DNA from: Octopus sinensis | Taxonomy: Eukaryota | Assembly (NCBI RefSeq): GCF_006345805.1 | Contig: NC_042999.1 | Coordinates: forward strand, 12,648,001-12,712,000 | Direction of reading: 5' to 3' | Length of the DNA stretch: 64,000 bases | Part shown: piece by piece, positions 8,041 to 64,000 of the stretch | Numbering within the stretch: the first letter of the stretch is position 1 | Layout: every line of letters starts with the position of its first letter | The notes under the pieces: generated by a model | Seen by the model: only the letters and a program-made list of their open reading frames with translations | Databases searched by the model: none | Told to the model about the DNA's origin: nothing | Program-made: the position numbers and the translations under genes

Positions 8041-8100
<60 letters not shown>

Positions 8101-9581: not shown

Positions 9582-9615
<34 letters not shown>

Positions 9616-10280: not shown

Positions 10281-10316
<36 letters not shown>

Positions 10317-14872: not shown

Positions 14873-14919
<47 letters not shown>

Positions 14920-14970
14920 TACATACATATATATATATACACATGTATATATATATTTATACATATATAC

Positions 14971-15052
<82 letters not shown>

Positions 15053-18000: not shown

Positions 18001-21000
18001 AGAAGATTTCAAAAGTATTATAGTGACAAAAAGGGCTAAGGATTAATTTTTGTAGGACTCTAATTTCAAGATATCTGGAATTACCATATGTAGTTCTGCA
18101 TTATAGAAATGAAATATAAAATACCAATATGATGCTTGCACATGTTTTATACTGCTTTATAAAATATTTTCTTCAATATTTACTTGCTAACTTTATGTTT
18201 GCCTTTGTCCTGTTGTGCTGCTGACCAGCACATCTAGATCACCTATATCGCCACCCAACATCTATTCTTGCCTTTATCTCACTATCTACCCTTACAAGTC
18301 TAGGGTGCCCTCCAGCCTTTCTTTCGTTTATTACCTTTGTTGCTTTCACCCACTGCTCCAACCTTCCCTTTTCTCTAACTGTCCTCCCTTCATTGCCTCC
18401 TTAACTGGAATACTTTCTCTGCATCCACACTGTTCTTCCCCATCCACCTCCTTGATACCCTCCAAGTTTTCTTACCCTCGTTACTTTTCCAGCATTCACT
18501 TTTCTTTCTCTGTCCTCTTCCCCATTTTCTCAGCCTCCTCAACTACCCCTCATCTGGCTACCCTTGTAACACACCATGTCTCTTTTTCCAGATTCTTTAC
18601 TACCCTTGTTTGTTTCTTCTATTTTTGTCCCCCTTTCACCAAAATCTTCTTTTTCTTACTTGCCCCTATAAAGTATTATATATAATGATATAATATAATG
18701 AAATTATTGTATACAGTGCTCAGGTGCTCCACAACTTGTCAGAAAGTGCATATAAAGTACATGCAGCAATGTAGAAATGTCTGGAAAGTGAACATGCTTG
18801 TGTGTGTATGGAGGGGAGAAAATCAAGTGTAGTGTTGGCGAATCTCAGGAAGCATGGAAGTTTTGAAGGATGCAGTGCTCCGACAACTAACAACTGATGC
18901 CGGCAGTTTGTTCCACGCTTCAGCAACTCTCAGCGTGAAAAAATGTTTCCTGAAGTCATGGGAGCTGTGCTGTTTTCTTACTTTGTAAATATGTCCATGG
19001 GTGTTAGATGGGTGGATTTTGAAGAGGTGCTCAGAGTTATTGTTTGTGCGATGGTTGATAATTTTATGGGTGTCTGCCAAGTCAGCTGCCAGACGTCGGA
19101 GTTTCAATGTGTCCATGCCCAGGGAAGTAAGGCGTTCAGGATATGGCAAATGCCTGATGGAGGGTATTCTTTTGGTTGCACGTTGCTGAACAGCTTCCAG
19201 ACGATTGATGTCCTGGGCAAGATAGGGGTTCCAGACCTGTGATGCAAATTCCAGGTGAGGTCTTACCATAGCTATATAAAGCCGCAGATAGATAGCTGGA
19301 GAGCGGCTCACAAAGGATTTGGTGAGTGATGCCAAGACACCCTCAGCCTTCTTGACAATTTTAGCGATGTGTTTTGTCCAACGCAAATCACTGTCGACAA
19401 TAACACCCAGGTCACATTCACTTGAAGACTTTTTGAGACTAGTGTTGTGGAGGGAGTAGGTGGACGCTGGGTTTCTCCTCCCATAATGCATGGTGGTACA
19501 TTTGTCCACAGCCAGCTTGAGTTGCTAGTCCATGATCCACTGCTGCATTGTGTCCAGGTCTGCTTGCAATAGAGATCCATAGTGTACAGGATTTGACCTC
19601 TTTATTTCGAGGTACAGCTTGATGTCATCTGCATATTTCAGCACTGTGGCATTCTTTAAGTTGGCATCTATGTCATTAACATATGCAACAAATAAAAGGG
19701 GGCCAAGAACAGATCCCTGCGGCACACCAGATGTCATCTCATAGGGCGAAGAGTGCTGTCCTAGAACTGTGACAACCTCTTTTCGGCCGAAAATAAAGGA
19801 CTTTAACCAGTTATAGAGTTCGTCTCTATTATATTGGACACTCGCACAACACCTTGCTATTCTGTCCCTACCTTTCTCATTAAATCCTGACTATCTTTGC
19901 TTCCCTTGATTTCTGCCATATTCCATTTTCATGCAGTGTCTGTTAATCTCTGCAATACCACCATCCTCACAATTATAAATCTATTCCTCTCATCGTGCTT
20001 CATCCTTTCTCATCAGACTCCAAAAATCATCACACACTCTCCCTTCTAATCTCCTTCTGTTTTAGGGTTTATTTAGGCTCATAGTTTTCCTGGTTGCAAG
20101 ATGACTTCACTGGTACTGGTACCACTGAAAAAAAAGGAAAACCAGTCCACTCTGTAAAATGGTTGGTATTAGGAAGGCCATCCAGCTATAGAAACCATAC
20201 TAAAACAGAGAGGGAGCATGGTGCCTTTCTCCAATTTGTTGGATCCGGTTGAACCATGCAAACTATGCCAGCAAAGAAGGTGGATGCTGATAACGAGGAT
20301 GAACTTTTTGTTTTGAATAAGCAAAACCCTTTGATTTCCTTTTAGTCATTGCTACTTTAACAAAGTTTGTTTTTGTCAGATTTGATCAAGTCGGATGTCC
20401 CTCTTCAGTCGGAGAGCAACATTTTGTCTCAAAGAATTTGTTTCTCAATTGAACCATACGTGTCTCCATGTCCTTGTAATCGAGTTACGACATGTACCAT
20501 CAATCTCTGTTTGGATGCTGAATGTCCAAGCTATCCCCAAGCCAATTGCTTTGTTGATGTCTGCAACGAATGCTCGCCAGTTTGGTACTTGAAAGGAAGG
20601 ATTGTTGACTGTGAAACGGTCAGAGGTAAGTAATGCAAAGAAATAATACCCGGAGAGTCAAGTAATACAATCTATACTTGATCATGCAAACTCTGTCCCC
20701 TGTAAAACTAATTTAGGATAAAAGCTTCTTAATTTCACACCAAGATCTTTTTCTAATTCTAAATTGATTTTATTATTAAAATATTTGGCACAATTCTTGA
20801 AATTTATTTAGATTATTTTGAACAACTAAGATTAATATTTTCTGAAAATGCTTTATATCATCACTCTATCATGAAAGTGGTTGAGAAGACCAGAGCAGAA
20901 ATTAAACTTAGAGCATGAAGAATAGGAAGAAATATAGCAAAGCATTTCTTCCAATGCTCTGACGATTCTGTTTGCTGACAGCATTTAGATGACAAATTGT

Positions 21001-24000
21001 CCTGATGTACACAATTAAAACATCAAATTATTACAGCTATCTGTGTACCACATTTAATGTATATATACTGTTGAAAGCATGATGCTGTAGTGAGAGAAAA
21101 TCTCTTTACAGACATGATAAAAACACAATATATATTGCTACTAAGCGGAAATTGTCTTAGCAGTGACATAAAACACCAGACAGATTCTAACCTTCTTAGG
21201 CCTCGTCAAGGGTGTGTTCTCACTCCCACATGCCTATATAAAATTATCTCCCTCTGACATATAGGGAACAGTGAATGATTTATTCACTAATATTGTAGAG
21301 AGCTTGCTGAACTGTAAATAAACTCAGTGCATGTATTTGAAACAGCAAATAATCATCTACATAGATATGTACGGCTATTACAGTTGAGAAAGCTTTCCAC
21401 AATATATATAAAGATGAACTATGATACACAGATTATTATAATAATGTTTGTCTGTACTTGTAGGGTTAATAGTGTTTATTTGAACCTCCTGTCATAGTGA
21501 CACACCCTCAGCCTATGTTTTTGCTTCTGTTGTATCTATACTCAGCTCCAATAACAATTTCTTAACTTGGAGTGTTTATATTTTTCTTTCATATTCTTAA
21601 CAGATTATTGTCATCCAAATCCATGTCAACATGGTGCTACATGCATCCAATCGGTGTGGCCTGCAGAACCTTGGTTAGTTTCCTGTAAATGTCCACCCGG
21701 TTATGAAGGTGATCATTGCCAGTACAAATCAAAAGAAATTTGTTACCTTCCTTTACAGAAAGGTAAGTCATTTTGTCATGCTCGATTTTCTATGTCGTTA
21801 TTACAGGGTATGACAAAAAATAAAACCCTTCCAGATTCACTAGTCTTGATAAAAGTTACAACAGAAAATGCAAAGTATGGCACCAGTCCTAACTAATAAT
21901 AACAAAAAGCAAGAAATGGTAAAACATTAGCTTGATGAAGACACCATTATTATCTGTCTAACTTAATGAGTGCCATACCAATAACTGTAAAATATGGGCG
22001 GTTTTTCTGTTTCAGCCTGTATTTTGGATAGATTTTAAAATGCAAACACTGTCAAATATTTTAATTACTTATTTACAACTTTTTGTTCATTTATAGAAAT
22101 GTGCTTAAAGAGTTTATTTTACAACTGATGTGGTTAAGGTTATTTGTAAAAGTTGCAAGTCAATGAATGCAGGAAAAATGTGCAGGAAGGGGGTTTCAGA
22201 CTTCCACTGTTCTGGGGAAGAAGGACTGAGCACAAAATATGAGTGATAAGATGAGGAAAGAAGAGTGAGTTGGGTGTTTGTGAGTCGTGGTATTATGATA
22301 TTAGCCAGCTCTGAAGCGTAGAGACCACTGTTAAAGATAGGCAAGGTGAGAAGCAGAGGTTGCTCAATACCAAATTTCATTTAGGTATGTAACTAGCAGT
22401 ACACATCATTGACAAGCCCAAAGGAAGCTGAAATGCATCTGGCATTCTCATGAATCATTGATATATATATATACCTATTGCTTTTTTTAACACAGCATAT
22501 CTATGAAAAGACTTTCTCTCAGAGAAAAACCTTCACATAAAAAGCACTGGTGCTGGTGCCATGTAAAAAGCACCAAAATACAGGCTGCAACAGAAAAACC
22601 TCCCATATTTTACAGTTATTGGTATGGCACTCATTAAGTTAGACAGATAATAATGGTGTCTTCATCAAGCTAATGTTTTACCATTTCTTGCTTTTACCCA
22701 TCCAACCCATGCTAGTGTAGGAATATGAATATATATGACTGTACGTAAGGAGTTTGGTGACATAGGTCTCCTCTCGTACGCCGCGCGGCCACATCCTAAC
22801 ATAATATAATAGAATAAGCCATAATACATGTTTATATTATACAGTGCCAAAGGAAATGAATAAAGGACGCCAAAACCGTTCTACTTTTATAAAGAGAAGA
22901 TAGATTTTATTCACAGTGTACAAAGTGAGTTGTGATTACTAGCGTAGTGTTGTGGTATGAATGCATGCGTATAATATTTGTGTCTGTGTGTTTGTGCGTG
23001 CGACAGGAGGTACAGATAAAGGTGCATGCGAATACACCAGAAATACAGAGCATAAAAGAAGTCTCAACATATTGAGTTAAGATAGAGTTATTTTATCAGT
23101 TCATGTAGTACACGATAATAAGTTCTATAACAAGATTTGGGTCTCGAAGAGGAGATTAGTTGAGTCTCTTGTTGAGCAGGTTTCTCTTGATATAGATGTT
23201 CTTTCAAGTATATATTCTGCAACTGTTTTTCCATGGTCATAGTTTCACACAAACAGCGTGAGATGAATCTGTGTATTTATCTTGTGTACAAGTTGAATCT
23301 CCGGAGATGGAGATGACGTTGGTGATGACGTTCTGTCTGTTGCTGCTATACAGTATAGTTGGCTTGGCTGACGTCTGTCTTTTGAACTGGAACATGGTTG
23401 AGTAAGCTCTGTGAGGTCTCCAACCAGACCTTAGAAGGTCTTGAGTCGAAAGACGGTGAATCGTGGAAATACTAGCCTATTTATGGAGTGAAGATGGCTC
23501 AATTGAAAGATCCTATCTGAAAGCCGTGATTGGTCAGTTTACACACTGGTGCGAAATAAGTAGAGAAACAGACTGCGCTTAGATGCTAACCAATCAGATC
23601 AGTGGACACAACAAGGTTAAACTAGCCAAAGATGTTTGTAATCTCAAACGAGAGCATTCCTAATGTTTTTCTCAAACAGTGAAGATAGCAATATTGCTAC
23701 ACTAGCATGGAAAACGGATGTTAAACGATAATGATGAGGATGATGATGGTGCCACATAAAAAGCACAGGTGATAGTGTCATGTAAAAAGTACCAAGTACA
23801 ATCTTATTTCTTTATTGCCCACAAGGAGCTAAACATAATCTGTAAAATAGTTGGCATTAGGAAGGGCTGTAGAAACTATGCCAAATCGGATCATGAAACC
23901 TGGTGCAACTCCTGACTTTGCCAGCTCCTGTCCAGCTATCCAGCCCATACTGGCATGGACTGGACATTATATGTTGATGATGATCATGATTAGGATGCCT

Positions 24001-25747
24001 TTCAGTGATGTATATAAGTTAAGAATGGTATACAGTTGGCTATAATAATCGTATTTGCCTGAGCTTGCAGGATGTGGTGTTCTTTCACACCTACTCTTCT
24101 GACCTTTCCTTTGAATGCAGTTTTGTTTTTTGTTTGTGCATATGGCAGCAACAATGGCTCAGAGTTGTTGGGAATTATTTTCCAACTGTGAAGTGGAGGA
24201 ATGCCAGTCTTTGGCTGCATCAGTTTTTGTTATGTTGAGGATATACCTTCACCAAGATAGTGAATCCAATCAGTTGTAGTGACATTCAGGGTTCTAGCTG
24301 CATGCTGCTCATGTTTTAAGACTGGAATGGGCTGCAGTAATGTTTTCTTGATTTTAATGTTTTGATTTCTTTTGTGCTTTTGAAGAAGACAAAATTGATA
24401 AAATCTCATTGAAGAATGTTTGCGAGGTTTCTATTCATGGAATCATTATAGGTTTGGTGTGGAGAGGTGACTAGGCTGCATGGGGATAATTTTTGGTTGT
24501 TGGAGACTTAGAGCAGAATGAAGGGTGATATAATTTATGTATAAGTGCTTGAAGGTGACGGTGAGTGGGTCTCTGATGAATGTGGGGTTCAAAACTGAAC
24601 CCTGGGGTACACAAGACATTATGGAATGTGAGTCATAGAGAACTCCATCAATACATATTGTGATAAGGATTTTAAATATTTCCTTTTGCTATCTATAATT
24701 TTTTTATACATTATTTATCAATTTATAAAGACATAGATGTAAAAACCCAACATCATTCTATCTTTTACAGGTTCCTGTTCAAGGAATGTGAGTCGTTGGT
24801 ACTTTGACTTCCATCGATCAAAATGTGTCCAGTTTGATTATTCTGGTTGTGGGGGCAATGCTAATTTATTTGAGACACTTACAGATTGCCAGAAAAAATG
24901 TGTTGTTGGTGCTTGTTGTTACCGGCAGCAACTTAATCCAGCAGTTACCATTGGCTTTGGTCCTGATGGCTATGATAAGTAAGATTAATTTTTCTAATTG
25001 TTTGTTGTATTATCCTTTTAAGCCTTAAGATTTACTTTCGCTCTATCACTAAGGGTTATTCAGCCTCTCTTGTATTAGTGTTATGGGAAAATGCTTCCAG
25101 TACATGTTGTGAAACCATTGATGTTAGAGAGGGCATCAAGTTGCAGAAAGCAAATCAGATAACACACTTGAGCACTTAGTCTTTGGGAATGATAGCGTTT
25201 AATGGGATATCACTCGGATTATGGTGATTCATCCAACCCATGCTAGCATGGAAAAACAAATGTAAAGTGATGTTGATGACAGCAATAGTTTCATTTGTGT
25301 GAATATCTCTTATTATAAAAGGCAGATTTTATCTGCCTCCCTTTGGGAGTTATACAAATCTACAATATAGGATTTCTTCAATTACAATTTACCTAGCAAT
25401 TTTAAGAGTACAATGCATCGCGTCATGCCAGGTCCAGTTTTTAAAATTTCAACTCCAATTAAGCAAAATTTACAGAAAACTCACATTCTGGTGTGTGTGT
25501 CAAATGCTTTTCTTAGTCTGGTTTACACCACACGCAAACGCACACACACAGTGGGCAACAAATAAAGTGAAACTAGATGTAATATTTGTTTCTCTCTATC
25601 ACGCTGATAGATACATGAGTAAAATGTATGGGAAGCTAACACATAAGTGTGAGTGAAAATGTTCTTGGAAGAGAGTAAATAGCCAGAGATAGTGATTTGA
25701 GGAACACTCATACATACATACATACATACATACATACATACATACAT

Positions 25748-25782
<35 letters not shown>

Positions 25783-26096
25783 TACATACATACACACACA
25801 CATACATACATACATACATATACATACATACATACATACATATACATACATACACACACACATACACACACACACAGTATTGAAGCTTGAGAACAATCAG
25901 ATACATTTGCAACACATCTGTTGAAAATATTATTGTTCACACACATACATATACATATATACATACAGACAGACAGGCAGATAGACACACACACACACAC
26001 ACATGATCCAGCATGGCCACAACCTCAAGGCTGAAACATATAAAAGAATAACAGAATATAAATGTGTGCATGTGTGTGAGAGAGAGAGTGTGTGTG

Positions 26097-26128
<32 letters not shown>

Positions 26129-29100
26129 TGTATATATATATATAATAATGCGGTTTTTTCAACAGCTTGAACTAAAAGTCAGAGGGGAATGGGATAAACT
26201 ACTTATATTAACTTGCTATAAAAGCAGGTAGTAATTTTATCTTGTCCTTATTCATAGTGCAAGTTTTGAAGAGTGCATTTCGATTTTAACAGCTATTTTT
26301 TTCAAAGCTATATTGGAACAGCCTAGAAGACGAGCCTCATCCTGAAAGATCTGTAGAACTCGACAAGGACATCCTGAAAACCCTGGTAGAACAAAATCTC
26401 ATCGTAACTGTTGAGGAACTAGCAGAGAAGCTTGGATTTGGTCATTCAACCATTCATTGAGACCTGTGTGCTATCGGAAAAGTCAGCAAATTGGGTCAAT
26501 GGGTTCCTCACGAACTTTCCGAGTCTAATTGCATGCAGAGAGTGAATGTATGCTTTTCTTTGCTGTCACATCTCACCACTACTGCGCTATGTATATCTAT
26601 ATATATAAAACTGTAGTTGTGTGAGTGTCTGTCCCCTTCGATTTAGATTCCTAACTACTCCCACATTTTGCGGTGCAGTTTAACCAAATTCGGGTAGCTT
26701 ATAGTCGTGATTCATATCGAGCCCGTCTGAGTATTAGCGCGCGTCTACGATGAGTCTACGATTTTAAAAATAATTTAACATCATTTTTTATTCCATTTTA
26801 ATGCATAATTTTTCGTGTGTCGATGGCGGCGGAGTTGGCGTCCACGCTCACACCTGCACCTGTGGGGAAGGGAGTGTAAGGAAATCAACGTCGTAATGCG
26901 TTGTCAAGGAGACCAGCGTTCTTTTAGAACGACTTCATGGCTTGAAGACACCAAAACAGAAATGGCTAAGAAAGCGTCTACATGAGTCTACGATTTAAAA
27001 AAAAATTTACCATCGTTTTTTTTCCATTTTAATGCATTTTTTCGCTATTATATAAGGGAAGTAACTCTCTAAAAATGTCTACGATGAGTCAACGATTTTT
27101 CAAAAAATTTACCATCATATTTTTTCCATTTTTAATGCATTTTTTGCTATTTTTTGGCTATAACTCTCTAAAAATGCTTATATAGTTATTTCCCTTACAA
27201 ACCCGAGCAACGCCGGGCGATACTGCTAGTCAGTTGATAAGAAAACTGATGAGCTGGTAAATTTCCCCCTACCCATGTAAACCTGAAATTACAGATGCAC
27301 AGATTTAAGATTCCACAGTTGGTTGGTGTCTCAGTTTCAAGTTTATATATGGCACAAATTATTGACTTTAGGCTAAATTTTCTTCTGTTTCTGCTACAAG
27401 ACACTAATGATTCTATTATTGTGTTCTGGGTCTCTAACTCTTGCTTGAAGTACTGATGTTTCTATGGATTTTCTATTATTTATTAACTGACAATTACTTA
27501 AGCTAATTGATATTTTAGCTGCTCATCAGAATGGATTGTTTTACTTGGTTTGAATATTTTGACAACTTATCTAAGTCAGTCCACAAAAAAAGAATTGAAC
27601 CTGTAGTCTGCACCAAACAAATAGCTGGTATGGCTTTGGGGTTAAAAAGATTGCTTCCCAATCACGTGGTTTCAAGTTCAGTCTCACTGTGTAACACCCT
27701 GGGTAAATTTCTTCTATAGCCTTGGGCTAACCAAAGCCTCGTAAGTGGATTTGGTAGATGGAAACTGACTGTTGTGTGTGTGTGTGTGTATTGACATCAT
27801 GCAATAGTTGTAAATGAGTGCCACTGTTATGTAAGCAATGTTCTTCATTATCAGTATTCCATGCCATAGAGAAATATTATCTTGCTTGCTAATAGGTGAG
27901 GGTTGGTAACAGGAAGGGCATCCAGCTGTAGAAAATCTACCTCAATGAATTCCATGTGACCTGGAAAAGTATATGAGAATGATTAACGGATCAGATGAGA
28001 AAGTCAGAAGAATCATACAATCTTACTCTTGTCTATGAATCTATAATTCTGATAATCTGTTTGCTGGTGTGGTAGAGCTGGAGGAGACTACAATAGTGGA
28101 CTCTCTGCAACTTGTTGAACATAGATGCTCCTTTCATTCACCATCCTCTGCAGGGCCAATATAATAAATACTAGTGATACAATGATCCAATTCAAATATA
28201 TAAATTCCCCTAAAAATTTGAACCAACACCTACTCCAAAGAAATGGAAATAATTAAAATAAATAATTTTCCAAAATTTTAACTTTCAGATATGGGTTTAA
28301 TGCAAAAGGTTACAACCAGTTAAGGAAAATATTCAATGCAAAAACTGGGATGAAGATGGGAATCAACAGATTCAAGAAGAATGGCTATGATTGGCATGGT
28401 GAGGCATTTCCCATTTTATACACAAATCTAACAAGTTATTCTCTTGCATGTATTGTGTAGGCTTGATGGTGTGGTGTCTTGTAAATGAGTCTCATCATAA
28501 AAGCAGTGAATTCTATATTTGGTTGTGATTCTTTTGTAAATGAGTAGGCTTCATGTTTCATTTATCTTATTAATAAGATAAATATATTTAAAAAAAAATT
28601 TCCTATTTCTTGCCTGTGTAAAGATTTTTCAAAGCGTAAGATAATTTTTTTTATTGTTATTATTAATATAATAATAATAATAATAATATCAGAGACCCTG
28701 ATTATTCATACTTGTTGCTATAATGATGATAATCATAAAAATAATGATGAGCTTGGGCATCCAGCTGTAGAAGTTTTGCAAAAGCAGACATTGGAGCGCA
28801 GTCCTCTGGCATGTCAGATACTGCTGAACCATCCAACCCATGCCAGCCTGGAATATGGATAGTAAATGATGATGATACTCAGGTGCATGATACTCAGGTA
28901 AAAGAGGGACAGAAAGCAGCAATAATTGAACAAAGAAAGACAACAACGATAGCCAAAATTACATGTATAGTAGACAGAATAAAATAATAAAAAGGGAACA
29001 TTAAATGAGTCCTAAAGAGAAAAGAATGTCTAGACACATCAGGAGTAATGTTGGGGAGCCTAGAATTTTTGAAGGGTTCCATGTCCTAATGGCTAATAAC

Positions 29101-32100
29101 AAATGTTGGTAGTTTATTCCATGCTTTAACAATTCTGAGTATGAACAAAATCTTTCTGAAAGTTATGGGTGAGGCGCTGTTCTTTGATTTTATGAGCAGA
29201 GATAATGGATTTAAAAAAGAGGACCAAAATTATTGTTGGAAAGGTAACGGATAATCTTCTTGTGGGATTCTACCAAGTCATTTATCTACACATTGAAAGT
29301 TTAGTGTGTCAATGCTCAGAGAAGCAAGACATTGAAAATATGGTGACTGTTGGAGAGTTTGTCTCCAGGATGTATATCTCTGCAAGGATTAAAAGACAAT
29401 CAGTTTAACATAGCTTCTGTAAACCCTTTTGTTACCATATTTCTGTTGAGATGCTGTGTGCTTCTTTCAATTAATTCTAAATATAACAAAGAATTTAGTA
29501 TAATAACTTAGTTATCATTAAGCTAGTGTTAGGAACATAAATTGTGACTAAGGTTTGGTGGAGGAATTTAATTCAGAACTTTTGAAAACAAGACATTTGT
29601 ACTACAGAGCCAGAGGTGGTTTCAGGCAGTTTGGTATCAAAAGGGTTAATCCACTATAGTTTCTGTTAATCTTATACAGTTTTGGTGGACATGCATAGCC
29701 TAGTGGTTAGGGTGTTGGACTTGTGATCGTAAGATTGTGGTTTCAATTCCTGGACTGGCTGATGCATTGTGTTCTTGAGCAAAGCACTTCATGTGGCTCC
29801 AGTCCACTCAGCTGGTAAAAATGCATCTCTGGATGGGATGCTGGTCCTGCGACGGACTGGCATCCAGAGAAGAATATATTTACATCAGAGAAACCAGGAA
29901 ACTGGTCTTTTGTTTCCTTTTGACTAACTTTTTTACAGTTTTAGTTTTCATCATAAAGTAATTTTGTTTCTTTCTGATCTGTGAACACTAATGGTTTCTC
30001 TATTGCAGGTTATGACAAAAATGGATTCAACTCTGTTGGTTATGATAGATTAGGCTACAATTCTGAAGGTTACGATCCGTTCGGATTCAACATGACGGGA
30101 TATAGCAGAGAAGGTGAGTTTGATGGCATGATCGACTATGATGATGATGGCTACGATGAAGAAGGTTACAACAGGTGAGATTTCTTATTACTATTTATTG
30201 ATTCTTTTTCATCATCATTGTTTTAATGTCTGTTTTTCCATACTTGTATGGGTTGGATGGAATTTGTTGAGGCACATATTCTGTGACCAGGTGCCCCTTC
30301 TGTTGTCAACCCTCACCTATTTCTAAGCAAAGTTTATTTCCCCCATAGCCATCAGGTTTTTCACAGAAGACCGAAAACAAACAACACTGCTTCTACGACA
30401 GTGATGCTCATTTACGACTATCACAAAACGTCAAGACAAGGTACAAACTCTCCCTCTCCCTCACACACACGCAGAAGCTCATGTACAAACCACAAACAAG
30501 GCAATAAATGAAATCCTGTCTCTGAAGGAGGTAGTGACAGTGTTTCCTATCAAAAGTAGGTGTATAGGAAGGTTCATTCGAGAATTTGGTGAGTTCTGTT
30601 GCTATGAGGAGTGAAGAATCTAATATTTTTAGTAGTTGCACTTTGTTGGGTGAGGAAAGGAGAGAAAGAGAGGAGGGGGGGCAGGTGTCACTGTCATTTT
30701 GGTTCAGAACGTTCTACTAAAGTAAGGAAAAACCTGGCACTCTGTTGGTTGCAGAGTTGCAGTTGATCCAATCAACCAAACTGCTTGCTCATGAAATTAA
30801 CATGCAAATGGCTGAGTACTCCAAAGACATGTGTCCCCTTAATGTAGATTTCAGGAAGATTTGGTGACGCCCAAAATGTGATAAGGCTGGCCGTTTGAAA
30901 TGTACGTACTACTCATGTTCACCAGCTGAGTGAACTGGAGCAAAGTGAAATAGAGTGTCTTGCTCAAGGCTACAACACATTACCAGGTATCGAACTCATG
31001 ACCTTACGATTGTGACCTGAATACCCTAACCCTGTCCCTTAAGCCATGCACAACAGGATAAAGGTTGGTTTAGTTAGGAATATGAATGTGTAATATGGCA
31101 AAAGCCTGGATTTTGTGATTAAGAAGTTTGTTTCACAGCCACATGACTTCAGGTTCAATACCACTCTGTGGCACTCTGGACCAGCGTCTTCAGCTTCAGT
31201 TACCCAATGCATTGGGATGGGAATCCATTGTGTGTGTGTGTGTAAATGTTTGTCTCCCTGTTGATACAGCTGGGGCAGTGGTGATGTTTCACAGCACTGC
31301 TACATAAACAGCACACCCTCTGGCTTGAGTTGTTATGGTGTTTGAAGATCAGCAGAATAAAATATACCTTAAAAAAAATAATAAATAAGGGCCGCCGGCA
31401 AGAGAGGCATTCAGCCATTAGAATACTGGCTCAGTAAGTCTCTTCTAACTGATGCAGGCATGGAAAAAGTGGATGTAAAGATGATGGTATTGTCGGTGGT
31501 GATTCCCTATTATCCAATTCAGTGCATTAAAATAATTAATAGCAAAAATCAAAACTCTAAATATCTATTATAGGAAAGCTCACTAAGCAATGACGATTAA
31601 GATATATGTGTAGTTAATAGGCCTAAGTACATTGAAATCTGGTGATTCTCACTGCAGAAATCTCTCAGGTGAGAGATTCTCTATATTTCAGTCAACACTG
31701 CCTAATGTGCTTCTAATTAGTTAATTCTAGCTTGACAAGGATTTGCATGCATCAGCAAATGTAGCATTTACTGTTTAAGAATTGTAGTTCTTAATGGGCT
31801 GTGAACAGTGGATTCAGTGTCTCTGCTGATGAAGCACAACAATGCTGAAATATGCAGCTTACAGTCTAATGATGTCATTGATGTGGTTCTCACACACTTT
31901 GTCTGTGAAGGAGAATTTCTCTCTTGAAACACAAATGCGTTAAATATAATTGTACACACCTGTATTTGAATCAACACTGCTTAGTGCTCCTCTAGTAAGT
32001 TAGTCTCAGCTTGTCAAAGTTTTGCACACATCAGCAAATTTCCCATTTGATGTTTAAATATATAAATGGTAGTTCTCAGAGGACCATGAATAATGGAAGC

Positions 32101-35100
32101 GGTATTCTTGGGTAAGTAGATGAAGGATCAAACTTGTGGATAAGATGCAACTTTATCACTAATAACATTTCCAGAATAAATATAATTCCTGATAATTGTT
32201 CTTCATAGCTAAGGAAAGTGAGGTAATGAAGAATTAAGAAGCCTGGGGACACATACTTGCATGTACATAGACACAATGTACAGATTAGTGTAAAGTAAGT
32301 TAAACTATTCTTTTTTTTTTGTTTCCTAGTCCAGTTAATTCATAATTTTAAGTTGACAAGAATCACCAGGTTTTCAGTTTCTTTGCATTTTTCCATTGGT
32401 TGTCATTTATTCATCATCATCATCATTTAGCGTCCGCTTTCCATGCTAGCATGGGTTGGACGGGTCAACTGGGGTCTGTGAAGCTGGAAGGCTTCGTCAG
32501 GCCCAGTCAGATCTGGCAGTGTTTCTACGGCTGGATGCCCTTCCTAACGCCAACCACTCCGCGAGTGTAGTGGGTGTTTTTTACGTGCCACCTGCACAGG
32601 TGCCAGACAGAGCTGGCGAATGGCCACGAACGGATGGTGCTTTTACGTGTCACCGGCACGGGGCCAGGCGATGCTGGCAACGGACACGAACGGATGGTGC
32701 TTTTACGTGCCACCGACACGGGGCCTCAAAACAAATTATTTGTAATCTTTTGGGGTTTTAACTCAAGATAAAATTGCATTTTAATAAAAAGAAATGATGA
32801 GGCAAATGATTACATAAAAATCACAGAATATCATTCTTATTTTGCCTAATTTCTCACCTGCATCACTGATTTGTATAACAATTTTGAGGTAATAATATCT
32901 AATTGATGAAAAATAGGTAAGGTGATGCCAATAAATGAAAATATAGAGAAAGATGATGTATTACCATATGTTAGTTATTTAGTGATCCTATAATATTTTG
33001 AGAAAGATTCCCCTTTCAAAAAATATAAAAAAAAGAAAAAGAATAGAGTTCAGACAAAATGTATTGTTACCTGCCGGCTATTTTGGTGGCCTGTTGGTAA
33101 CCTTATAAATGCCAATTATTTAATTTTGAGTCTCGTTACTGGCAGGCCATTAGAATGCCTTGCTATTCAAAATTATATTAATTGGCAGGAAAAGCTAAGT
33201 TAACTTTAACAGAACTAAGATACCATTACTCTAAATCCATTCTAAACCAGTGTATATGTGATGGAATGTTGTGATGTAAAATAAAATTGATTCAAACAGA
33301 TTAAGGAAATTTATTTCTGTTTCTTTTTACAGGGCAGGGTTCAATTGTGAAGGTGTTAACCGAGATGGTTTGGATATTTATGGACGTCATGCTGGCTTCA
33401 AGTATACTTGCATGAGAACCACAAGGAAAAGGTGTCAACATTTGGAAACCGAAGATGATGTTCAAATTGTTCGTTTTTCTCCAGGAAAAAAATGTGAAGA
33501 TGTCAGTTGCAAGCCAAATTGTATGTGTTGGTTTAATAATCAGTTCCATAGGATTTGGGACGATTTCAATGTAGGCTGTGAGAAATTTCAGTGTCACTTG
33601 GGAGGGTTTTCAGAAATGAATTCTTGTCAAAAACATTTACAACGCAAAGAGATTCGTGACATGAGTTTTGATGAAATAAAGCGTTACCAACTTGTCATCC
33701 AGAATCTACAGCATGAAAAAAGAAATGGTAAATCTGTGTGGTTTGAATTTGCTGAAATGTATTCAGAATATATTCCTCAAGCTTCAGGAAATCCTTTATT
33801 TTTGCCATGGCATCGCTACTTTTTGTTTATGGTTGAAAAGTTGATGCAAGATGTTGAATGTGGTGTTGTGATCCCATATTATGATTGGACCCTTGATATT
33901 GGTGTCTTGAATAAATCGGTTATTTGGTCATCAAAATTTTTTGGTGGTAATGGTGAAAATGGAACAGACTGTGTCAGATATCATCCGTTTAAGTCTTATC
34001 ATCCACCATATTGGGCACCTTGTCTCCGTAGACACTTCAATTCTTCAGTACATCTTCCAGACGCAATTCATGTTTACTTGGCTTTACAGGAAAGTACCTT
34101 TAGTGATTTCTCAGCTTACATGGAATCAATGCTGCATCTTTTCCAGATGTGGGTTGGAGGCCACATGGACTCACCTCTCAGTGCTTACGACCCCCTTTTC
34201 TATTCACATGTAGCTTTTATTGATAAACTCTGGGATGATTGGCAGAGGAGTCATAAAAAAGGTTTGCTGCGATTTCCTCCTAATTTTCGATATGTTCCTA
34301 TGGAACCTTTCAAAGTTACTCCTGATGATGTATTAGATTGCAAAAAACAAATCTGTATAACCTATCTGAATTTACCATTTGGATCACCATGTAACCAGAC
34401 CAAAATAAAGACCTATGGATATGATAGTGATAGTTATGATCGTCATGGCTTTGATAAAAATGGTTATGATAAAGATGGATTTGATGTACATGGAATAAAC
34501 ATTGATGGCTATATTGATCTCAGAGGAATATATAATAATGAGGGATTTGACAAAGAAGGCTTTTCTCGACAAGGTTTTGATAGTATGGGCTACGACAGAG
34601 ATCTTTTTTTCAAAGATGGTTACAATTCTGACGGCTTTGATGTTGCTGGCTATGACAGATCTGGTCATAACAGATATGGTTTCAGTAGAATCAAAACGAA
34701 TGTCTTCAGTGAACATGTCTCTACATTCAGAAAGAATGAGTTCAATGAACTTGGATTAAATAACTTGGGTTTTAATAACAAAGGGTTTGACATTTTTGGT
34801 TTTGACAAGGATGGATTCAATCGCTTTGGCTGCAATTACTATTTCAATGGCCCGTTTTATATAATCATATACCAGTCACTTAAAAATAAACTTAGCGAGA
34901 TAAAATCCATGCATTCTTTGATAAATATTCCAAGGTTGTGTTCTGCAGTGTCACAGCTTCCTCAGTGGATGTATAAAGTTTATTGGTTGAACCGGCAAAA
35001 AAACATTCCAGAAGTTTTGGCAATAATGGCTCTGGACAGACTGAAAAATCCTTATTCATTTGATGATGTCTTTGACAAAATTTGGGTTCCTCCTGTTCCT

Positions 35101-38100
35101 GATCCGAGGTAAACAATAACAATTTTGATTTATTGATTTTCTAAAAAAAATTCATTTATTCTATTCTGACCAATTCCCGGCTGTGTGTGTGTGTGTGTGT
35201 GCGTGTGGTGTGTGTGTGTGTGCGTGTGTGTGTGTGCGTGTGTGTGTGTGTGTGTGTGCACATGTTTGTGTTTTGCACACATTTTACAGCTTTTACGACT
35301 AGGGGACAGAGGGTTAAAAATGTGTGCACACAAGGTCTTCAAGTCAAATTTCTTTAATTGAAGAGGATTATTCAATTCACAATGCAATTCAAAAGTAAAT
35401 TTTTGTGCTGAAAATTTGAACCTTGGTTGAGACTGATAATTGTGTTAATTTGTATTTGTTTAACAATTTTTATTTCTCTGATTTTAATTGTGGCACCAGC
35501 ACCATTATCAATTCTGCTACGGTGGACAGGTCTTCTTGAGTACAGCTAGGTGCCAGGTATCTTGGTCCTTTGTCAACTCCTTCGTAAGGCTCAGTGTCTT
35601 GAGATTGGCCTTCAATACTTCGTCCCATGTCTTTCTGGGTTTCTTTCTTCCACAAGTTCTCTCCAACTTTAAGTGATCGGCACTTCTGTATGCAACTGTC
35701 TACATCCATATGCATCACCTGACCAAACCACACTAATTCCTCCTATGCCATAATTTTCTCTCACCACACTAGTACTCTGTCACCGATGGGCTAGGGGCTT
35801 TCCCTGTCCCTTAATTGCTTTACTGCTGTCAACACAAATAGCTGGTCCCTCTGTTGGGTTCACACTGAGGAAACTGCCGTTCTCCCATTCACTCTCCACA
35901 TGTAATAATCCCTCATAGTAGCACTTCCATGCCTCTTTCTTTTCAGAGTCACTGAACACAAGCATACCATCATCCATATGTACACACTTCTCTTCCACAA
36001 CATCTTGATTAGACATATTGATGGCTTGTATAAAGGCATTTAAAGTTAGTGGATAAGAGAAGTGATATCACTAAGGGTGATGAATGCATCAATGGCTTCA
36101 AATTTTGGCACAAGGCCAACAATTTTAGTGGTCAGGAGCAAGTCAAATCCAGTACTTGATTCCCTGAAAAGATGGGCTAGGGGCTTTCCCTGTCCCTTAA
36201 TTGCCTTACTGCTGTCAACACAAATAGCTGGTCCCTCTGTTGGGTTCACACTGAGGAAACTGCTTTTCTGCCATTCACTCTCCACATGTAATAATCTCTC
36301 ATAGTAGCACTTCATCCATGATGGAATTTGAACTTAGAATGTAAAGATCTCGAAGAATTGCTGTCCATTACATTAACAATTTTGCCAACTTGTCACTTTA
36401 ATAATAATAATAATAATACAACAACAACAACAACAACAACAATAATAATAATAATAATGATGATAATGATGATGCCTCAAACTATATCTTAAGGAACCCA
36501 CGTTACTGATTAGCCTGTTTCTTCTCTCTGCTTCTTCTATTTCTACTTCAATAGCTTTTGGTCCTATAAACTAGCACACTTCATAGCCTCAAACTCACTA
36601 GGTTCCCTATTTACATCTTGTCCTCATTCCTATAATACCACATTAGTTTATATATAAAACACCAAATGTTTTGTATGATCCTTTCTTCCTTTCAGCTCTA
36701 TGAAATTCTCTTTCCACCTGTTTTTCTTGGACTTTTGACCAACTGAATTTATAGATTAAACATTTGCCTATATCAGTCTTGAAGTGCTCTTCTATGTGTG
36801 CCTAATTCATGAAAAGAAGGTTGGTGTAGTTTTCAGATATGTGAATAGGGTTCTATAGTGAAACATACTTTATTTTTGTTTTATAAAGAATTAGCCATAT
36901 AAATTCTGAAGAAGAATCTTTGTGGTTTAATTTTGTCTGTGTTTTCTTGAGAATTTCCTAGAAGATAATGGACTTAATGAGTCATGCTCATTTAACATCC
37001 ATTTTTCCATGCTTGCATGGGTTGGATGGTTAGTTAGGAACCAAAGGACCATGCTGCCCTCCAACATCTGCTTTATCATGGTTTCCACAACTGGTTGCCT
37101 TACCTAATGTCAATCACTTCATAGTGCACTGGTGCCTCTTTTGTGATACCAGCTCTGGCAAGGTCACAAAGTACTTGCAAGACAAGATCCTTCAACTGAG
37201 TGGGATGTAGTATTGAGTGATATGAGTATGAAAGGAATTTCTTATCTATGGGTCAAAAGAAGGGATATCCATCAGTCCCTTGCAGTGTGTTGTCTGTCTT
37301 GGTAGTTTTTAAATTGTGAGGAATCAATTACAACATGCTTTTGCAATTCCTGTTGATGGAAGCAGTGCAAACCTGGTGGTAGGTGTTTGCTTTCTACAAA
37401 CAGTTGCTAATGTGTAACTCAGTCTAATATTGATAGTTACCTGTATGGTTTAGAGATGACATGGAGGAGGTTGATGTAGAGAAGAAAGAGAACAAGACAT
37501 ATAATGAAACTTGTTTGATTGATGACTTGCAACGCTTACGATATCAACCTGCCTGAGAAGGCCCGCTCCTCATTCTATGATACAAATGTCCTCTTTTAAA
37601 GTAATCTAAATAAATAAAAAAAAAGCCCTTCCACTGAAATTTCTGAAATGTTAATTTATGTTCCAAACACCAGTTAAATAATCTTTTCTGCTCTAGGCAC
37701 AAGGCCCAAAATTTTGTGGGAGGGGCCAGTCGATTAGATTAACCCCAGTATTCAACTGATACTAAATTTATAAACCCAGAAAAGATGAAAGGCAAAGTTG
37801 ACCTTGGCGGAATTTGAACTCAGAATGTAAAGACAGAGGAAATGCCGCTAAGCATTTCGCCCGGCATGCTAATGTTTCTGTCAGCTCGCTGCCTTACACC
37901 AGTTAAATAATGGCAAAGTTATTTTAATAAATTCTTCATTATTTTCAAAATTAATTAAAACAAAGTCAGTGAGTGTATTTTATGTGAAAAATGGTTATAA
38001 AAGGACTAAATACATAATCTCCACTAATCTGTTCTTTTGGAAACAATAAACAAAGCCATGACAGGATCAACTGATTAGCATTAAAGAAAAAAAACTGCAA

Positions 38101-50100: not shown

Positions 50101-51930
50101 TGGCACCTGTGTCGGTGGCATATAAAAAACACCATCCTTAAGGGTCAATATCTGTGATATTTATGCTTCAAATTGTTTCAGCTATTTATCAGTATAGATC
50201 CTTAAGGATCAATATCTGTGATATTTATGCTTCAAATTGTTTCAGCTATTTATCAATATTGATCCTTAAGCATCAATATCTGTGATATTTATGCTTCAAA
50301 TTGTTTCAGCTATTTATCAATATTGATCCTTAAGGATCAATATCTGTGATATTTATGCTTCAAATTGTTTCAGCTATTTATCAATATTGATCCTTAAGGA
50401 TCAATATCTGTGATATTTATGCTTCAAATTGTTTCAGCTATTTATCAATATTTATCCTTAAGCATCAATATCTTTGATATTTATGCTTCAAATTGTTTCA
50501 GCTATTTATCAATATTGATTCTTAAGGATCAATATCTGTGATATTTATGCTTCAAATTGTTTCAGCTATTTATCAATATTGATCCTTAAGCATCAATATC
50601 TGTGATATTTATGCTTCAAATTGTTTCAGCTATTTATCAATATTGATCCTTAAGGATCAATATCTGTGATATTTATGCTTCAAATTGTTTCAGCTATTTA
50701 TCAATATTGATCCTTAAGGGTCAATATCTGTGACATTCATACTTCAAATTGTTTCAGCTATGTATCAATATAGGTCCTTAAGGATCAATATCTGTGATAT
50801 TTATGCTTCAAATTGTTTCAGCTATTTATCACCGAGTCTGGCTGTCTGCCAGCCTCGTCTGGCACCTGTGTCGGTGGCATATAAAAAACACCATCCTTAA
50901 GGGTCAATATCTGTGATATTTATGCTTCAAATTGTTTCAGCTATTTATCAGTATAGATCCTTAAGGATCAATATCTGTGATATTTATGCTTCAAATTGTT
51001 TCAGCTATCTATCAATATTGATCCTTAAGGATCAATATCTGTGATATTTATGCTTCAAATTGTTTCAGCTATTTATCAATATAGATCCTTAAGGATCAAT
51101 ATCTGTGATATTTATGCTTCAAATTGTTTCTGCTATTTGTCAATATAGATCCTTAAGGATCAATATCTGTGATATTTATTCTGCATTTTACAGGTTTTGT
51201 TTGGAAACAAACTTCTTTTCAAAATGTCCCCTGGGTCATGCTCCTGTCAAATGTTCATCAGATTTGTGCTTTGATACAATTTGTCCTGGTAAGATTCATT
51301 TATTTTTTATATTATTTTTAATTCAATATATTATATTTTTTTAAACAAAATTCCATTCTTTATAACATTTCAATCTCTCATTTTCACATAGCTTCATCTT
51401 GGTTATACTCATGTGTTTTCAATAAGGCATTACTACGTATATCCTCATCATTTAATGTCCATGTTCCATGCTTATATATCTTTATATATTGGAAAAAAAA
51501 CGAGTAGAAATTTTGCTCTGGATAATTTTTCTTTTAATCTTCATAATGTTTACAGTGAGTTACTCAGACATGAATTTCAAGCTTTCAAGTAGCTGTTTTC
51601 AAACTGAAAAATATATGTTCTACTGGTTGCTTAAATAGCCAAAAAATTTTTTTGTTAGGAGTATATACACAAAAAGAGGAAAAATATATAAAAAATACAA
51701 AGGCATGTGTATAGAAGGTGGAGAAGAAGTGGGGGAAACAAGTAAATGAAATAAAGATAAGAATAACGATAAGACTAATGGTATTTGAGAAGAGGAGAAA
51801 GTAGAGTTAAATCCCTTAAGAATAAAGAAGGGGAGTATTTTGGAGGGGTCATTATTGTTGTGAATTATCAAAAGATTTGAGGTCAGATGTTCAGCTCTCA
51901 CACATGATATGGTGTGTGTATATGTGTATA

Positions 51931-51962
<32 letters not shown>

Positions 51963-52809: not shown

Positions 52810-52845
<36 letters not shown>

Positions 52846-60778: not shown

Positions 60779-60815
<37 letters not shown>

Positions 60816-63942: not shown

Positions 63943-64000
63943 GTAAAATCCCATTCAGTTGAGTAATTAAGCTTTCTCTCATTATCGTGTCTGCTGCATT

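What the first reader, a model, noticed from the sequence alone, without database searches (positions are those of the whole stretch)
33643..34370. Tyrosinase-like domain 2 has lost nearly all copper ligands yet the ORF and fold motifs are intact
Seen: [25 protein letters not shown] aligns without gaps to domain 1, with A1=Tyr, A2=Ser, A3=His. [13 protein letters not shown] gives B1=Leu and B2=Gln; DPLFYSHV gives B3=Val. Structural motifs (RKEIRD, PYYDW, FFGGNG, CLRRHF, DP.F) and Cys are retained in a stop-free 580-aa ORF. Inference: selection maintains a metal-free tyrosinase fold, for example as a phenol-, quinone- or protein-binding module.
Basis: partly seen in the sequence, partly recalled or inferred. 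Interest (0 to 1): 0.75.

Follow-up and report, generated by a model that had tools for sequence, protein, structure and literature searches.

The report
Copper-less tyrosinase module in octopod Kielin/chordin-like gene

Summary
Window 33631-34368 (+) encodes a Pfam Tyrosinase domain (E=2.9e-24). Its six copper-ligand positions read Tyr, Ser, His | Leu, Gln, Val, so only HA3 survives.

Three points need correcting.
- The "580-aa ORF" is one internal exon (33333-35108). It has phase-compatible splice sites, and its "stop" lies inside the GT donor.
- The canonical HA1 position is Tyr131, not Tyr134. Both are Tyr.
- "Domain 1" is also non-canonical: HB1 is Ala and HB3 is Gln.

The window is collinear with residues 445-2151 of the kielin/chordin-like protein of Argonauta hians (3774 aa; 2 tyrosinase, 20 VWC and 1 VWD domains).

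The same module, never with a full ligand set, occurs in the kielin/chordin-like proteins (KCPs) of a brachiopod, horseshoe crabs, a crinoid, amphioxus and a shark. It also occurs in a hemichordate protein and in shorter gene models from ray-finned fishes. HB1 is lost in all of them. Choanoflagellate relatives mostly keep 5-6 His.

- dN/dS for the orthologous exon in two other species is 0.12-0.15.
- Octopod-Argonauta identity is 86.6%, with all six ligand positions identical.
- AlphaFold gives pLDDT above 90 over nearly all of the domain. Foldseek matches bacterial tyrosinases (TM 0.72-0.76).

Best reading: a selected, non-catalytic tyrosinase-fold module of a secreted KCP. What it binds is unknown.

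The parts
33333..35108 (+). Single 1776-nt internal exon encoding the whole 'unit 2' module: GYD repeats, Cys-rich region, tyrosinase-like domain, GYD repeats and C-terminal helical region.
   Evidence: Acceptor cag|G at 33330-33332 and donor AG|GTAAAC at 35109. Junction codons AG(30173-30174)+G(33333) and AG(35107-35108)+G(51194) both give Arg and reproduce the Argonauta protein across both junctions. 84.7% identical to P0121 residues 1262-1856.
33631..34368 (+). Tyrosinase-like domain of unit 2 (exon residues 100-345). This is the finding itself.
   Evidence: Pfam PF00264 E=2.9e-24. AlphaFold pLDDT above 90 in nearly every 10-residue block. Foldseek matches to bacterial tyrosinases, E=6e-15, target TM 0.72-0.76.
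33760..33762 (+). Canonical HA1 position, now Tyr (TAT).
   Evidence: This column is His in 31 of 36 canonical relatives. Coordinates.
33784..33786 (+). HA2 position, now Ser (TCA).
   Evidence: Aligned to the 'HG' His of hemocyanin units..
33811..33813 (+). HA3 position, His retained (CAT, in LPWHR). This is the only surviving ligand.
   Evidence: His in 41 of 48 family members.
34132..34134 (+). HB1 position, now Leu (CTG).
   Evidence: No His in 49 family members.
34144..34146 (+). HB2 position, now Gln (CAG).
34210..34212 (+). HB3 position, now Val (GTA). The preceding non-ligand His (34207-34209) is kept.
34369..34848 (+). Run of G[YF][DN]xx pentapeptide ('GYD') repeats following the domain; about 20 pentads.
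   Evidence: pLDDT mostly 85-94 in the full-exon model, with a dip to 62-79 around exon residues 441-480.
34849..35108 (+). Conserved C-terminal helical region of the module.
   Evidence: Helices 509-583. Lowest dN/dS of the exon, 0.05-0.07.
6383..6745 (+). Unit 1 ('domain 1') exon with the CuA region. His at -5, -4, -2, HA2 and HA3; Tyr at the canonical HA1 column.
   Evidence: 86.8% identical to P0121 residues 525-645.
7338..7895 (+). Unit 1 exon with the CuB region (HB1 Ala, HB2 His, HB3 Gln) and the first GYD repeats. Boundaries approximate.
15457..20624 (+). Remaining unit 1 exons, boundaries approximate: GYD repeats 15457-15660, C-terminal region 16635-16889, Cys-rich tail 20385-20624.
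21594..30174 (+). Linker exons between the two units: EGF 21594-21764, Kunitz 24770-24979, GYD repeats 28287-28400 and 29990-30174.
   Evidence: Collinear with P0121 residues 1047-1264. Pfam EGF 7.7e-9 and Kunitz 8.8e-16. Donor at 30175.
51194..63944 (+). Downstream exons of the same gene: Cys-rich tail 51194-51288 and 53766-53861; VWC-repeat exons 58145-58228, 59530-59625, 60413-60661, 62884-62976 and 63762-63944. The gene runs off the window.
   Evidence: Pfam VWC 1.2e-10 for 60413-60661.

Best explanation
The region is the second of two tandem tyrosinase-derived modules in an octopod kielin/chordin-like protein (KCP) gene. The KCP is a very large secreted multi-domain protein; the orthologue has 20 VWC repeats and a VWD domain.

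The domain keeps the type-3-copper four-helix-bundle fold, but five of its six histidine ligands are replaced, mostly by hydrophobic or uncharged residues (Tyr, Ser, Leu, Gln, Val). It therefore most likely binds no binuclear copper and has no oxidase or oxygen-binding activity.

Purifying selection maintains it as a non-catalytic structural or binding module. It is folded together with its flanking GYD pentapeptide repeats and C-terminal helical region.

- **Shown:** fold homology, ligand replacement, conservation of the replacement across phyla, purifying selection, and gene context.
- **Inferred:** absence of metal, non-catalytic role, extracellular location, and the idea that the module serves KCP function. 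KCP is known in vertebrates to enhance BMP signalling (PMC10315795).
- **Unknown:** the binding partner.
For: **Fold.** Pfam E=2.9e-24. AlphaFold mean pLDDT 82 and pTM 0.84, with above 90 in nearly every block of the domain. Foldseek top hits are bacterial tyrosinases, E=6e-15, TM 0.72-0.76.

**Ligands.** Y,S,H|L,Q,V. Family frequencies: HB1 is Ser, Leu, Ala or Phe and never His (0 of 49); HB3 is Met, Ala, Ile or Tyr (His in 1 of 49); HA2 is Val, Gly or Asn (His in 3 of 48).

**Context.** 18 collinear stop-free exon matches to A. hians KCP residues 445-2151. Its Pfam content is 20 VWC, 2 Tyrosinase and 1 VWD. Splice phases reproduce the orthologue's sequence across the junctions.

**Selection.** Omega is 0.12-0.15 for the tyrosinase-like part and 0.05-0.07 for the C-terminal part, between two orthologous exons with dS 0.4-0.5. 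Identity to Argonauta is 86.6%, with all six positions identical; this is as high as or higher than the VWC exons at 61-86%.

**Age.** Both units form separate clades spanning protostomes and deuterostomes, with NJ bootstrap 100% and 90%. Named members come from Lingula, Limulus, Tachypleus, Anneissia, Branchiostoma, Ptychodera, Hemiscyllium and many ray-finned fishes.
Against: - No metal-binding or activity data exist; 'copper-free' rests on sequence alone.
- The family has a conserved His directly after WVGG (44 of 49). Many members also have His at -5 (19 of 46), HB2 (11 of 49) and HA3 (41 of 48), so a non-canonical mononuclear site cannot be excluded for some members.
- No transcript evidence was available for this species. 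The single-polypeptide model rests on predicted gene models from other species.
Confidence: 0.72

Rival explanations
1. The domain still binds a metal or is catalytic through a re-wired, non-canonical site. An example would be a mononuclear Cu, Zn or Fe site built from His148, the conserved His after WVGG, His280, Tyr or Gln.
For: His148 (HA3), the WVGG-His (44 of 49), the 'waterkeeper' Glu (26 of 49, plus Gln in 18) and HB3-1 His (28 of 49) are conserved. Unit 1-type modules keep up to 4 His in several phyla.
Against: - In unit 2 of octopods only one canonical ligand remains.
- Replacements at the ligand columns vary between lineages and are largely hydrophobic: Val/Gly, Ser/Leu/Ala/Phe and Met/Ala/Ile. 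This looks like cavity in-fill rather than a new conserved ligand set.
- HB1+1 His256 is not conserved (3 of 49).
Confidence: 0.1
2. Unit 2 is expressed, always or also, as a separate shorter secreted protein (Kunitz, module and Cys-rich tail) rather than only inside the giant KCP. That would make 'domain 1' and 'domain 2' different products.
For: Many ray-finned-fish gene models of 690-800 aa contain only Kunitz, one module and a Cys tail, and end at '...C.GW'. The octopod single-gene model is inferred from predicted proteins of other species.
Against: - 18 collinear, same-strand, phase-compatible exons link unit 1, the linker, unit 2 and the VWC repeats.
- Independent KCP models of Argonauta and Lingula contain both units in one chain, as does the uncharacterized Ptychodera protein.
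- No stop follows the unit-2 Cys tail in the window's orthologue.
Confidence: 0.13
3. Domain 2 is a decaying, functionless relic: a species-specific pseudo-domain or a processed retrocopy, given its intronless state.
For: Five of six ligands are lost. The module is a single exon, whereas paralogous unit 1 is split into at least 4 exons.
Against: - Omega is 0.12-0.15.
- The 592-codon reading frame of the exon is intact here, in Argonauta, in L001 and L002/L003, and in dozens of other species.
- The identical ligand set is found in Argonauta.
- Units 1 and 2 are only about 34% identical, and each clade spans the bilaterians.
- The exon has conserved acceptor and donor sites in three species.
Confidence: 0.03

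Closest known systems
Kielin/chordin-like protein (KCP; Kielin), an extracellular BMP-signalling modulator built of VWC (chordin-type CR) repeats plus a VWD domain
   Same: The window is collinear with the protein annotated as kielin/chordin-like in Argonauta hians (74-92% identity in 13 exon matches, 59-70% in the other five). VWC exons are present in the window, and the orthologue has 20 VWC and 1 VWD.
   Different: From my own knowledge, not tested here: the characterised mammalian KCP consists of CR repeats and a VWD only. The invertebrate, shark and fish forms carry one or two EGF-Kunitz-GYD-tyrosinase-like modules at the N-terminal side. I found this mentioned only in passing, as '>3,000 amino acids ... 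kielin/chordin-like domain' (PMC11667028). BMP binding by the octopod protein is untested.
Type-3 copper proteins of the PF00264 kind (bacterial tyrosinases such as 1wx2 and 8hpi; molluscan hemocyanin functional units; secreted molluscan tyrosinases)
   Same: Same fold and motifs: FLPWHR, PY.DW, FGG.G, WVGG, DP.F..H...D.LW. Foldseek target TM 0.72-0.76 and 22-29% identity.
   Different: The defining H-x(n)-H-x8-H and H-x3-H-x(n)-H ligand sets are gone (1 of 6 left). The domain is embedded in a multi-domain extracellular protein and flanked by GYD repeats.
Copper-ligand-deficient derivatives of oxygen carriers: arthropod hexamerins/pseudohemocyanins and Biomphalaria hemocyanin-like Hcl-1/Hcl-2
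   Same: Descendants of type-3 copper proteins that lost canonical histidines yet are retained and expressed for another role (PMC5201427).
   Different: Hexamerins belong to the arthropod hemocyanin superfamily (PF00372), not PF00264, and are free storage proteins. Hcl-1 lacks one His per functional unit and Hcl-2 one or more in four of its six units, and both are lineage-specific. Here the loss is 5 of 6 and bilaterian-wide, in a domain of a signalling or matrix protein.
TYRP1 / TYRP2 (DCT)
   Same: Tyrosinase-fold proteins that do not use copper in the classical way (zinc) (PMC3658974, PMC10113262).
   Different: They keep all six histidines and a binuclear metal site. The present domain does not.
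Choanoflagellate giant proteins (Salpingoeca urceolata P0141, S. rosetta P0137 and P0148, Hartaetosiga P0144)
   Same: They share the GYD-repeat, Cys-rich and tyrosinase part of the module (query residues 1 to about 390). They group next to the bilaterian KCP modules with 67% bootstrap.
   Different: P0141 has the full His set and P0148 is canonical at HA2, HA3 and all three CuB positions. P0137 and P0144 have themselves lost ligands (3 and 1 His in the count). Their remaining architecture was not analysed.

Membership tests
Type-3 copper protein (tyrosinase / catechol oxidase / molluscan hemocyanin unit, PF00264) | Sequence and fold of the common central tyrosinase domain | tested here: met
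   Pfam E=2.9e-24, 87 bits against a cut-off of 22.6. Foldseek E=6e-15, target TM 0.72-0.76.
Type-3 copper protein (tyrosinase / catechol oxidase / molluscan hemocyanin unit, PF00264) | CuA site: three His, H-x(n)-H-x8-H | tested here: not met
   Tyr131, Ser139, His148.
Type-3 copper protein (tyrosinase / catechol oxidase / molluscan hemocyanin unit, PF00264) | CuB site: three His, H-x3-H-x(n)-H | tested here: not met
   Leu255, Gln259, Val281.
Type-3 copper protein (tyrosinase / catechol oxidase / molluscan hemocyanin unit, PF00264) | Binds two copper ions and dioxygen; phenol oxidase or oxygen-carrier activity | not testable with these tools
   Needs metal analysis and enzyme assay.
Kielin/chordin-like protein (KCP) | Orthology or collinearity with annotated KCPs | tested here: met
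   18 collinear exon matches to A. hians KCP residues 445-2151. The same module occurs in the KCPs of Lingula, Limulus, Tachypleus, Anneissia, Branchiostoma and Hemiscyllium.
Kielin/chordin-like protein (KCP) | Array of VWC (chordin-type cysteine-rich) repeats | tested here: met
   VWC exon 60413-60661, Pfam E=1.2e-10. Further VWC-like exons lie at 58145-63944. The orthologue has 20 VWC.
Kielin/chordin-like protein (KCP) | C-terminal VWD domain | tested here: inconclusive
   Present in orthologues P0121 and P0125, but that part of the gene lies beyond the end of the window.
Kielin/chordin-like protein (KCP) | Binds BMPs and modulates BMP/TGF-beta signalling | not testable with these tools
   Known for vertebrate Kcp (PMC10315795). 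Untested for any tyrosinase-module-bearing form.
Hexamerin / pseudohemocyanin (copper-free arthropod hemocyanin derivatives) | Membership of the arthropod hemocyanin superfamily (PF00372 and partners) | tested here: not met
   Only PF00264 matched. This is an analogy of evolutionary fate, not membership.

The most novel reading that the evidence does not exclude
A tyrosinase-derived pseudoenzyme module, duplicated into two paralogous units before the protostome-deuterostome split, is an ancestral and still selected component of bilaterian Kielin/chordin-like proteins. It descends from a histidine-complete module that survives in choanoflagellates. No tetrapod appeared among the named hits, so it may have been lost there.

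This would give this class of BMP modulators an unrecognised ligand- or matrix-binding function. Examples would be docking to phenolic or quinone-tanned matrices, or to a protein partner through the former substrate pocket.
Probability: 0.45. Interest if true: 0.65.

Novelty: new variant of a known kind. Interest (0 to 1): 0.55.

Why it matters
The finding would add a clean, very old example of a pseudoenzyme domain derived from the tyrosinase/hemocyanin (PF00264) fold. The domain has been under purifying selection across hundreds of millions of years.

It would also show that non-tetrapod Kielin/chordin-like proteins carry one or two large modules of unknown function that the well-studied mammalian KCP lacks.

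That makes two questions testable:
- What can a copper-less tyrosinase fold bind?
- Does KCP in molluscs, echinoderms, sharks and fishes have activities beyond VWC-mediated BMP binding?

There is also a practical point. Counts of "tyrosinase genes" in mollusc and fish genomes that rely on PF00264 hits include these non-enzymes.

Tried and rejected
1. **Two tandem genes, with a signal peptide on P0001.** Rejected. The 'MDISVIYIIFYVCFFT' N-terminus is translated polypyrimidine tract and acceptor, because L002 is collinear genomic DNA. The Argonauta and Lingula KCP models and the uncharacterized Ptychodera protein carry both units in one chain.
2. **Retrocopy or processed pseudogene, suggested by the intronless unit 2.** Rejected on four grounds. 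The splice sites are conserved in three species. The units are about 34% identical. Each clade is ancient. Omega is about 0.13.
3. **Exact look-up of the window's own ORF to identify the species.** Not on record.
4. **dN/dS window versus L001/L002.** dS is saturated (NG86 undefined, ML dS above 5), so only dN of about 0.2 is usable. I could not fetch Argonauta DNA.
5. **Modelling the GYD-repeat and C-terminal part alone.** Using a 15-sequence alignment gave a poor model (pLDDT 55, pTM 0.38) with no PDB match. This compares with mostly 85-94 in the full-exon model built from 49 sequences. The comparison is confounded by alignment depth, so it does not prove that the repeats pack on the domain.
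6. **Pocket analysis.** Not possible, because model coordinates are not exposed.
7. **Literature searches**. No description of the ligand loss was found. PMC11667028 only mentions very long tyrosinase-domain proteins with kielin/chordin-like domains as outliers. PMC11803259 lists some mollusc and chordate 'd type' or unclassified polyphenol oxidases without detail.
8. **Pfam on four intronic ORFs** (RT-like and repeat-derived). No hits.
Full report
**1. What is at the coordinates**

The + strand frame through 33643-34370 is open from 33280 to 35112.

The translated region is a bona fide tyrosinase-type domain:
- Pfam PF00264 scores E=2.9e-24, 87 bits against a gathering score of 22.6.
- Molluscan hemocyanins score E down to 7e-60.
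- Streptomyces tyrosinase scores 1.8e-22.

The residue-by-residue alignments to hemocyanin functional units place the residues as follows:
- Ser139 lies under the 'HG' histidine (HA2).
- His148 lies under WHR (HA3).
- Leu255 and Gln259 lie under the H-x3-H pair (HB1, HB2).
- Val281 lies under the second His of the 'HH' pair (HB3).

I aligned 83 tyrosinase-domain sequences to a profile. In the 36 that are canonical at the other five positions, HA1 sits eight residues before HA2 (His in 31 of 36). In the window both positions are Tyr (Tyr131, Tyr134), so the statement 'A1 = Tyr' stands.

Net result: one of six ligands survives.

**2. It is an exon, not an ORF**

- Upstream, a polypyrimidine tract and cag|G acceptor end at 33332.
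- Downstream, the frame 'stops' at TAA 35110-35112, which is part of an AG|GTAAAC donor.
- The preceding exon ends AG|GTGAGA at 30174. The next exon begins after ttttacag| at 51194.
- Both junctions are phase 2. They rebuild Arg codons and reproduce '...GYNR|AGFNCEG...' and '...PDxR|FCLETN...' exactly as in the orthologous protein.
- The same acceptor and donor are present in the orthologous exon of two other species.
- The apparent signal peptide on database protein P0001 is translated intron.

**3. Gene context**

An exhaustive HMMER search returned P0121, 3774 aa. It is annotated as kielin/chordin-like protein of Argonauta hians (GAB1599713.1).

Its residues 445-2151 map to the window as 18 collinear, same-strand exon matches from 4191 to 63944. 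Identity is 74-92% in 13 of them and 59-70% in the other five. There are no internal stops.

The order along the protein is:
2. An EGF exon and a Kunitz exon (Pfam 7.7e-9 and 8.8e-16).
3. GYD-repeat exons.
4. Unit 2, the single exon 33333-35108.
5. A Cys-rich tail (51194-51288, 53766-53861).
6. VWC repeats running to the window's end (Pfam VWC 1.2e-10 for 60413-60661).

P0121 as a whole has 20 VWC, 2 Tyrosinase and 1 VWD domains. The protein, however, is a KCP, not a tyrosinase.

**4. The ligand loss is family-wide and old**

All 57 near-full-length homologues from the first search lack most ligands. They include Elysia, unnamed mollusc-like contigs and many ray-finned fishes.

In the 49-sequence alignment the columns read:

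| Position | Residues | His count |
|---|---|---|
| HA1 | Tyr/Arg | 3 of 46 |
| HA2 | Val/Gly/Asn | 3 of 48 |
| HA3 | His | 41 of 48 |
| HB1 | Ser/Leu/Ala/Phe | 0 of 49 |
| HB2 | Gln/Arg/His/Lys | 11 of 49 |
| HB3 | Met/Ala/Ile/Tyr | 1 of 49 |

Named proteins with the module, all annotated kielin/chordin-like:
- Lingula anatina
- Limulus polyphemus
- Tachypleus tridentatus
- Anneissia japonica
- Branchiostoma floridae
- Hemiscyllium ocellatum

Ptychodera flava has an uncharacterized protein with the module. None has a complete site, and HB1 is missing in every one.

Unit 1-type modules typically keep four His (for example Lingula H,R,H|A,H,H). Unit 2-type modules keep one to three. Argonauta unit 2 has exactly the window's Y,S,H|L,Q,V.

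Choanoflagellate giant proteins share the GYD, Cys-rich and tyrosinase part:
- Salpingoeca urceolata has all six His.
- One S. rosetta protein (P0148) is canonical at HA2, HA3 and the three CuB positions.
- P0137 and Hartaetosiga have themselves lost ligands.

A neighbour-joining tree puts unit 1 and unit 2 sequences in separate clades, each containing protostomes and deuterostomes. Bootstrap support over 200 replicates is 100% for unit 1, 90% for unit 2, 94% for all KCP modules together and 67% for the grouping with choanoflagellates. The duplication, and at least the HB1 loss, therefore predate the bilaterian radiation. This rests on distance trees only.

**5. Selection**

For the orthologous exon in two other species (L001 and L002, 87% nucleotide identity, dS 0.4-0.5), dN/dS values are (NG86 and ML):

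| Region | dN/dS |
|---|---|
| Tyrosinase-like part | 0.12-0.15 |
| Repeats | 0.17-0.20 |
| C-terminal region | 0.05-0.07 |

Against the window, dS is saturated and dN is 0.19-0.23 for the domain.

Window versus Argonauta identity is 86.6% in the domain, 86.9% in the repeats and 84.9% in the C-terminal part. The VWC exons of the same gene are 61-86% identical. The domain is thus at least as constrained as the parts of KCP whose function is understood.

**6. Structure**

AlphaFold2 on the whole exon product with 49 homologues gives:
- mean pLDDT 82 and pTM 0.84;
- above 90 in nearly every 10-residue block of residues 100-310 (one block dips to 73);
- mostly 85-94 over the GYD repeats, dipping to 62-79 around residues 441-480;
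- low confidence at the far N-terminus and the last 20 residues.

Foldseek against the PDB returns bacterial tyrosinases first (E=6e-15, target TM 0.72-0.76, 22-29% identity). Hemocyanin units and TYRP1 follow.

The repeat and C-terminal part modelled alone with 15 sequences is poor (pLDDT 55) and has no PDB match. Coordinates are not exposed, so I could not inspect the former active site.

**7. Mechanism**

The replacements at ligand columns are mostly hydrophobic or small, and they differ among lineages. The surrounding structural motifs and five cysteines are invariant. That pattern fits in-filling of a no-longer-used metal cavity within a fold kept for another purpose. It fits a re-engineered catalytic site poorly.

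I therefore favour a non-catalytic structural or binding module of a secreted KCP (confidence about 0.7).

A family-specific His directly after WVGG (44 of 49) is the best candidate for a new functional residue. From my recollection of bacterial tyrosinase structures, it probably lies near the pocket entrance. This was not checked on coordinates.

Rivals:
- a residual non-canonical metal site (about 0.1);
- expression also as a separate short protein, as fish gene models suggest (about 0.13; this does not conflict with the pseudoenzyme reading);
- neutral decay (about 0.03).

**8. Comparison with what is known, and novelty**

The gene is already annotated as kielin/chordin-like in relatives, and Pfam flags its tyrosinase domains.

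One paper notes in passing that tyrosinase-domain proteins over 3000 aa with kielin/chordin-like domains fall outside the tyrosinase clusters (PMC11667028). I found no description of the histidine loss, its phyletic breadth or the selection on it.

Conceptually it parallels hexamerins and Biomphalaria Hcl proteins (PMC5201427). It differs in three ways:
- it belongs to a different superfamily branch than hexamerins;
- the ligand loss is much deeper than in Hcl;
- it is a domain inside a signalling or matrix protein.

Vertebrate Kcp enhances BMP signalling (PMC10315795). KCP-like VWC proteins are the most abundant eggcase-matrix proteins of Argonauta (bioRxiv 10.1101/2021.07.10.451900). Whether that includes this gene is unknown.

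I rate it a new variant of a known kind, of moderate interest.

**9. Limits**

- The species is not identified.
- There is no transcript evidence for this species.
- The taxa of L001 and L002 are unknown.
- Trees are distance-based.
- 'Loss in tetrapods' rests only on the absence of tetrapods among named hits and on my recollection of mammalian KCP architecture.

Noticed in passing
window 6383-6745 and 7338-7895: Unit 1 ('domain 1') is not a canonical tyrosinase either. HB1 is Ala, HB3 is Gln and the canonical HA1 column is Tyr. It carries a His cluster VHHMHSHGG (His at -5, -4, -2 and HA2) plus HA3 and HB2. Argonauta keeps -5, -2, HA2 and HA3. Unit 1-type modules in other phyla keep about 4 His, so a non-canonical metal site is more plausible here than in unit 2.
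   Followed up: partly
window 33333-35108 versus 6383-16889: The whole unit 2 module is one 1776-nt exon, whereas paralogous unit 1 is split into at least four exons over 10 kb. The single-exon state is shared by the orthologous loci L001, L002 and L003, and apparently by many mollusc contigs.
   Followed up: partly
window 34369-34848, also 15457-15660, 28287-28400 and 29990-30174: Runs of G[YF][DN]xx pentapeptide repeats flank both tyrosinase-like domains. The same repeat gives strong hits (E down to 1e-48) to many bacterial proteins, including DUF6273 and TrbI/VirB10-family proteins with 27-48 double pentads. No Pfam family matched, and there was no PDB fold match for the isolated region.
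   Followed up: partly
window 39211-42651 and 43462-51000+: The 16-kb intron after the unit 2 exon holds two large satellite arrays: a strongly strand-skewed CA-rich 34/35-bp unit x about 99, and a 64-bp unit x at least 118. A 100-N assembly gap sits at 39111.
   Followed up: partly
window 34162-34164 (His after WVGG): A family-specific His directly following WVGG is conserved in 44 of 49 KCP-module sequences. In the Streptomyces tyrosinase sequence as I recall it, that position is Gln. It is a candidate new functional residue.
   Followed up: no
window 1955-2440 (-) and 32456-32761 (+): Two intronic copies of a repeat encode similar ORFs ('[32 protein letters not shown]...'). These are presumably an interspersed element. 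No Pfam hit for the 1955-2440 copy, the only one scanned.
   Followed up: partly
window 18823-19509 (-) and 54409-54837 (-): Two intronic ORFs (228 and 142 aa) look like fragments of retroelement polymerase C-terminal regions, but neither gave a Pfam hit at E<=0.01.
   Followed up: partly
proteins P0021, P0034, P0038 and others (ray-finned fishes): Fish gene models of 690-800 aa contain Kunitz, one module and a Cys tail, and end '...C.GW'. The shark KCP continues from the same point into VWC repeats. This suggests either a gene split or an alternative isoform in ray-finned fishes.
   Followed up: no
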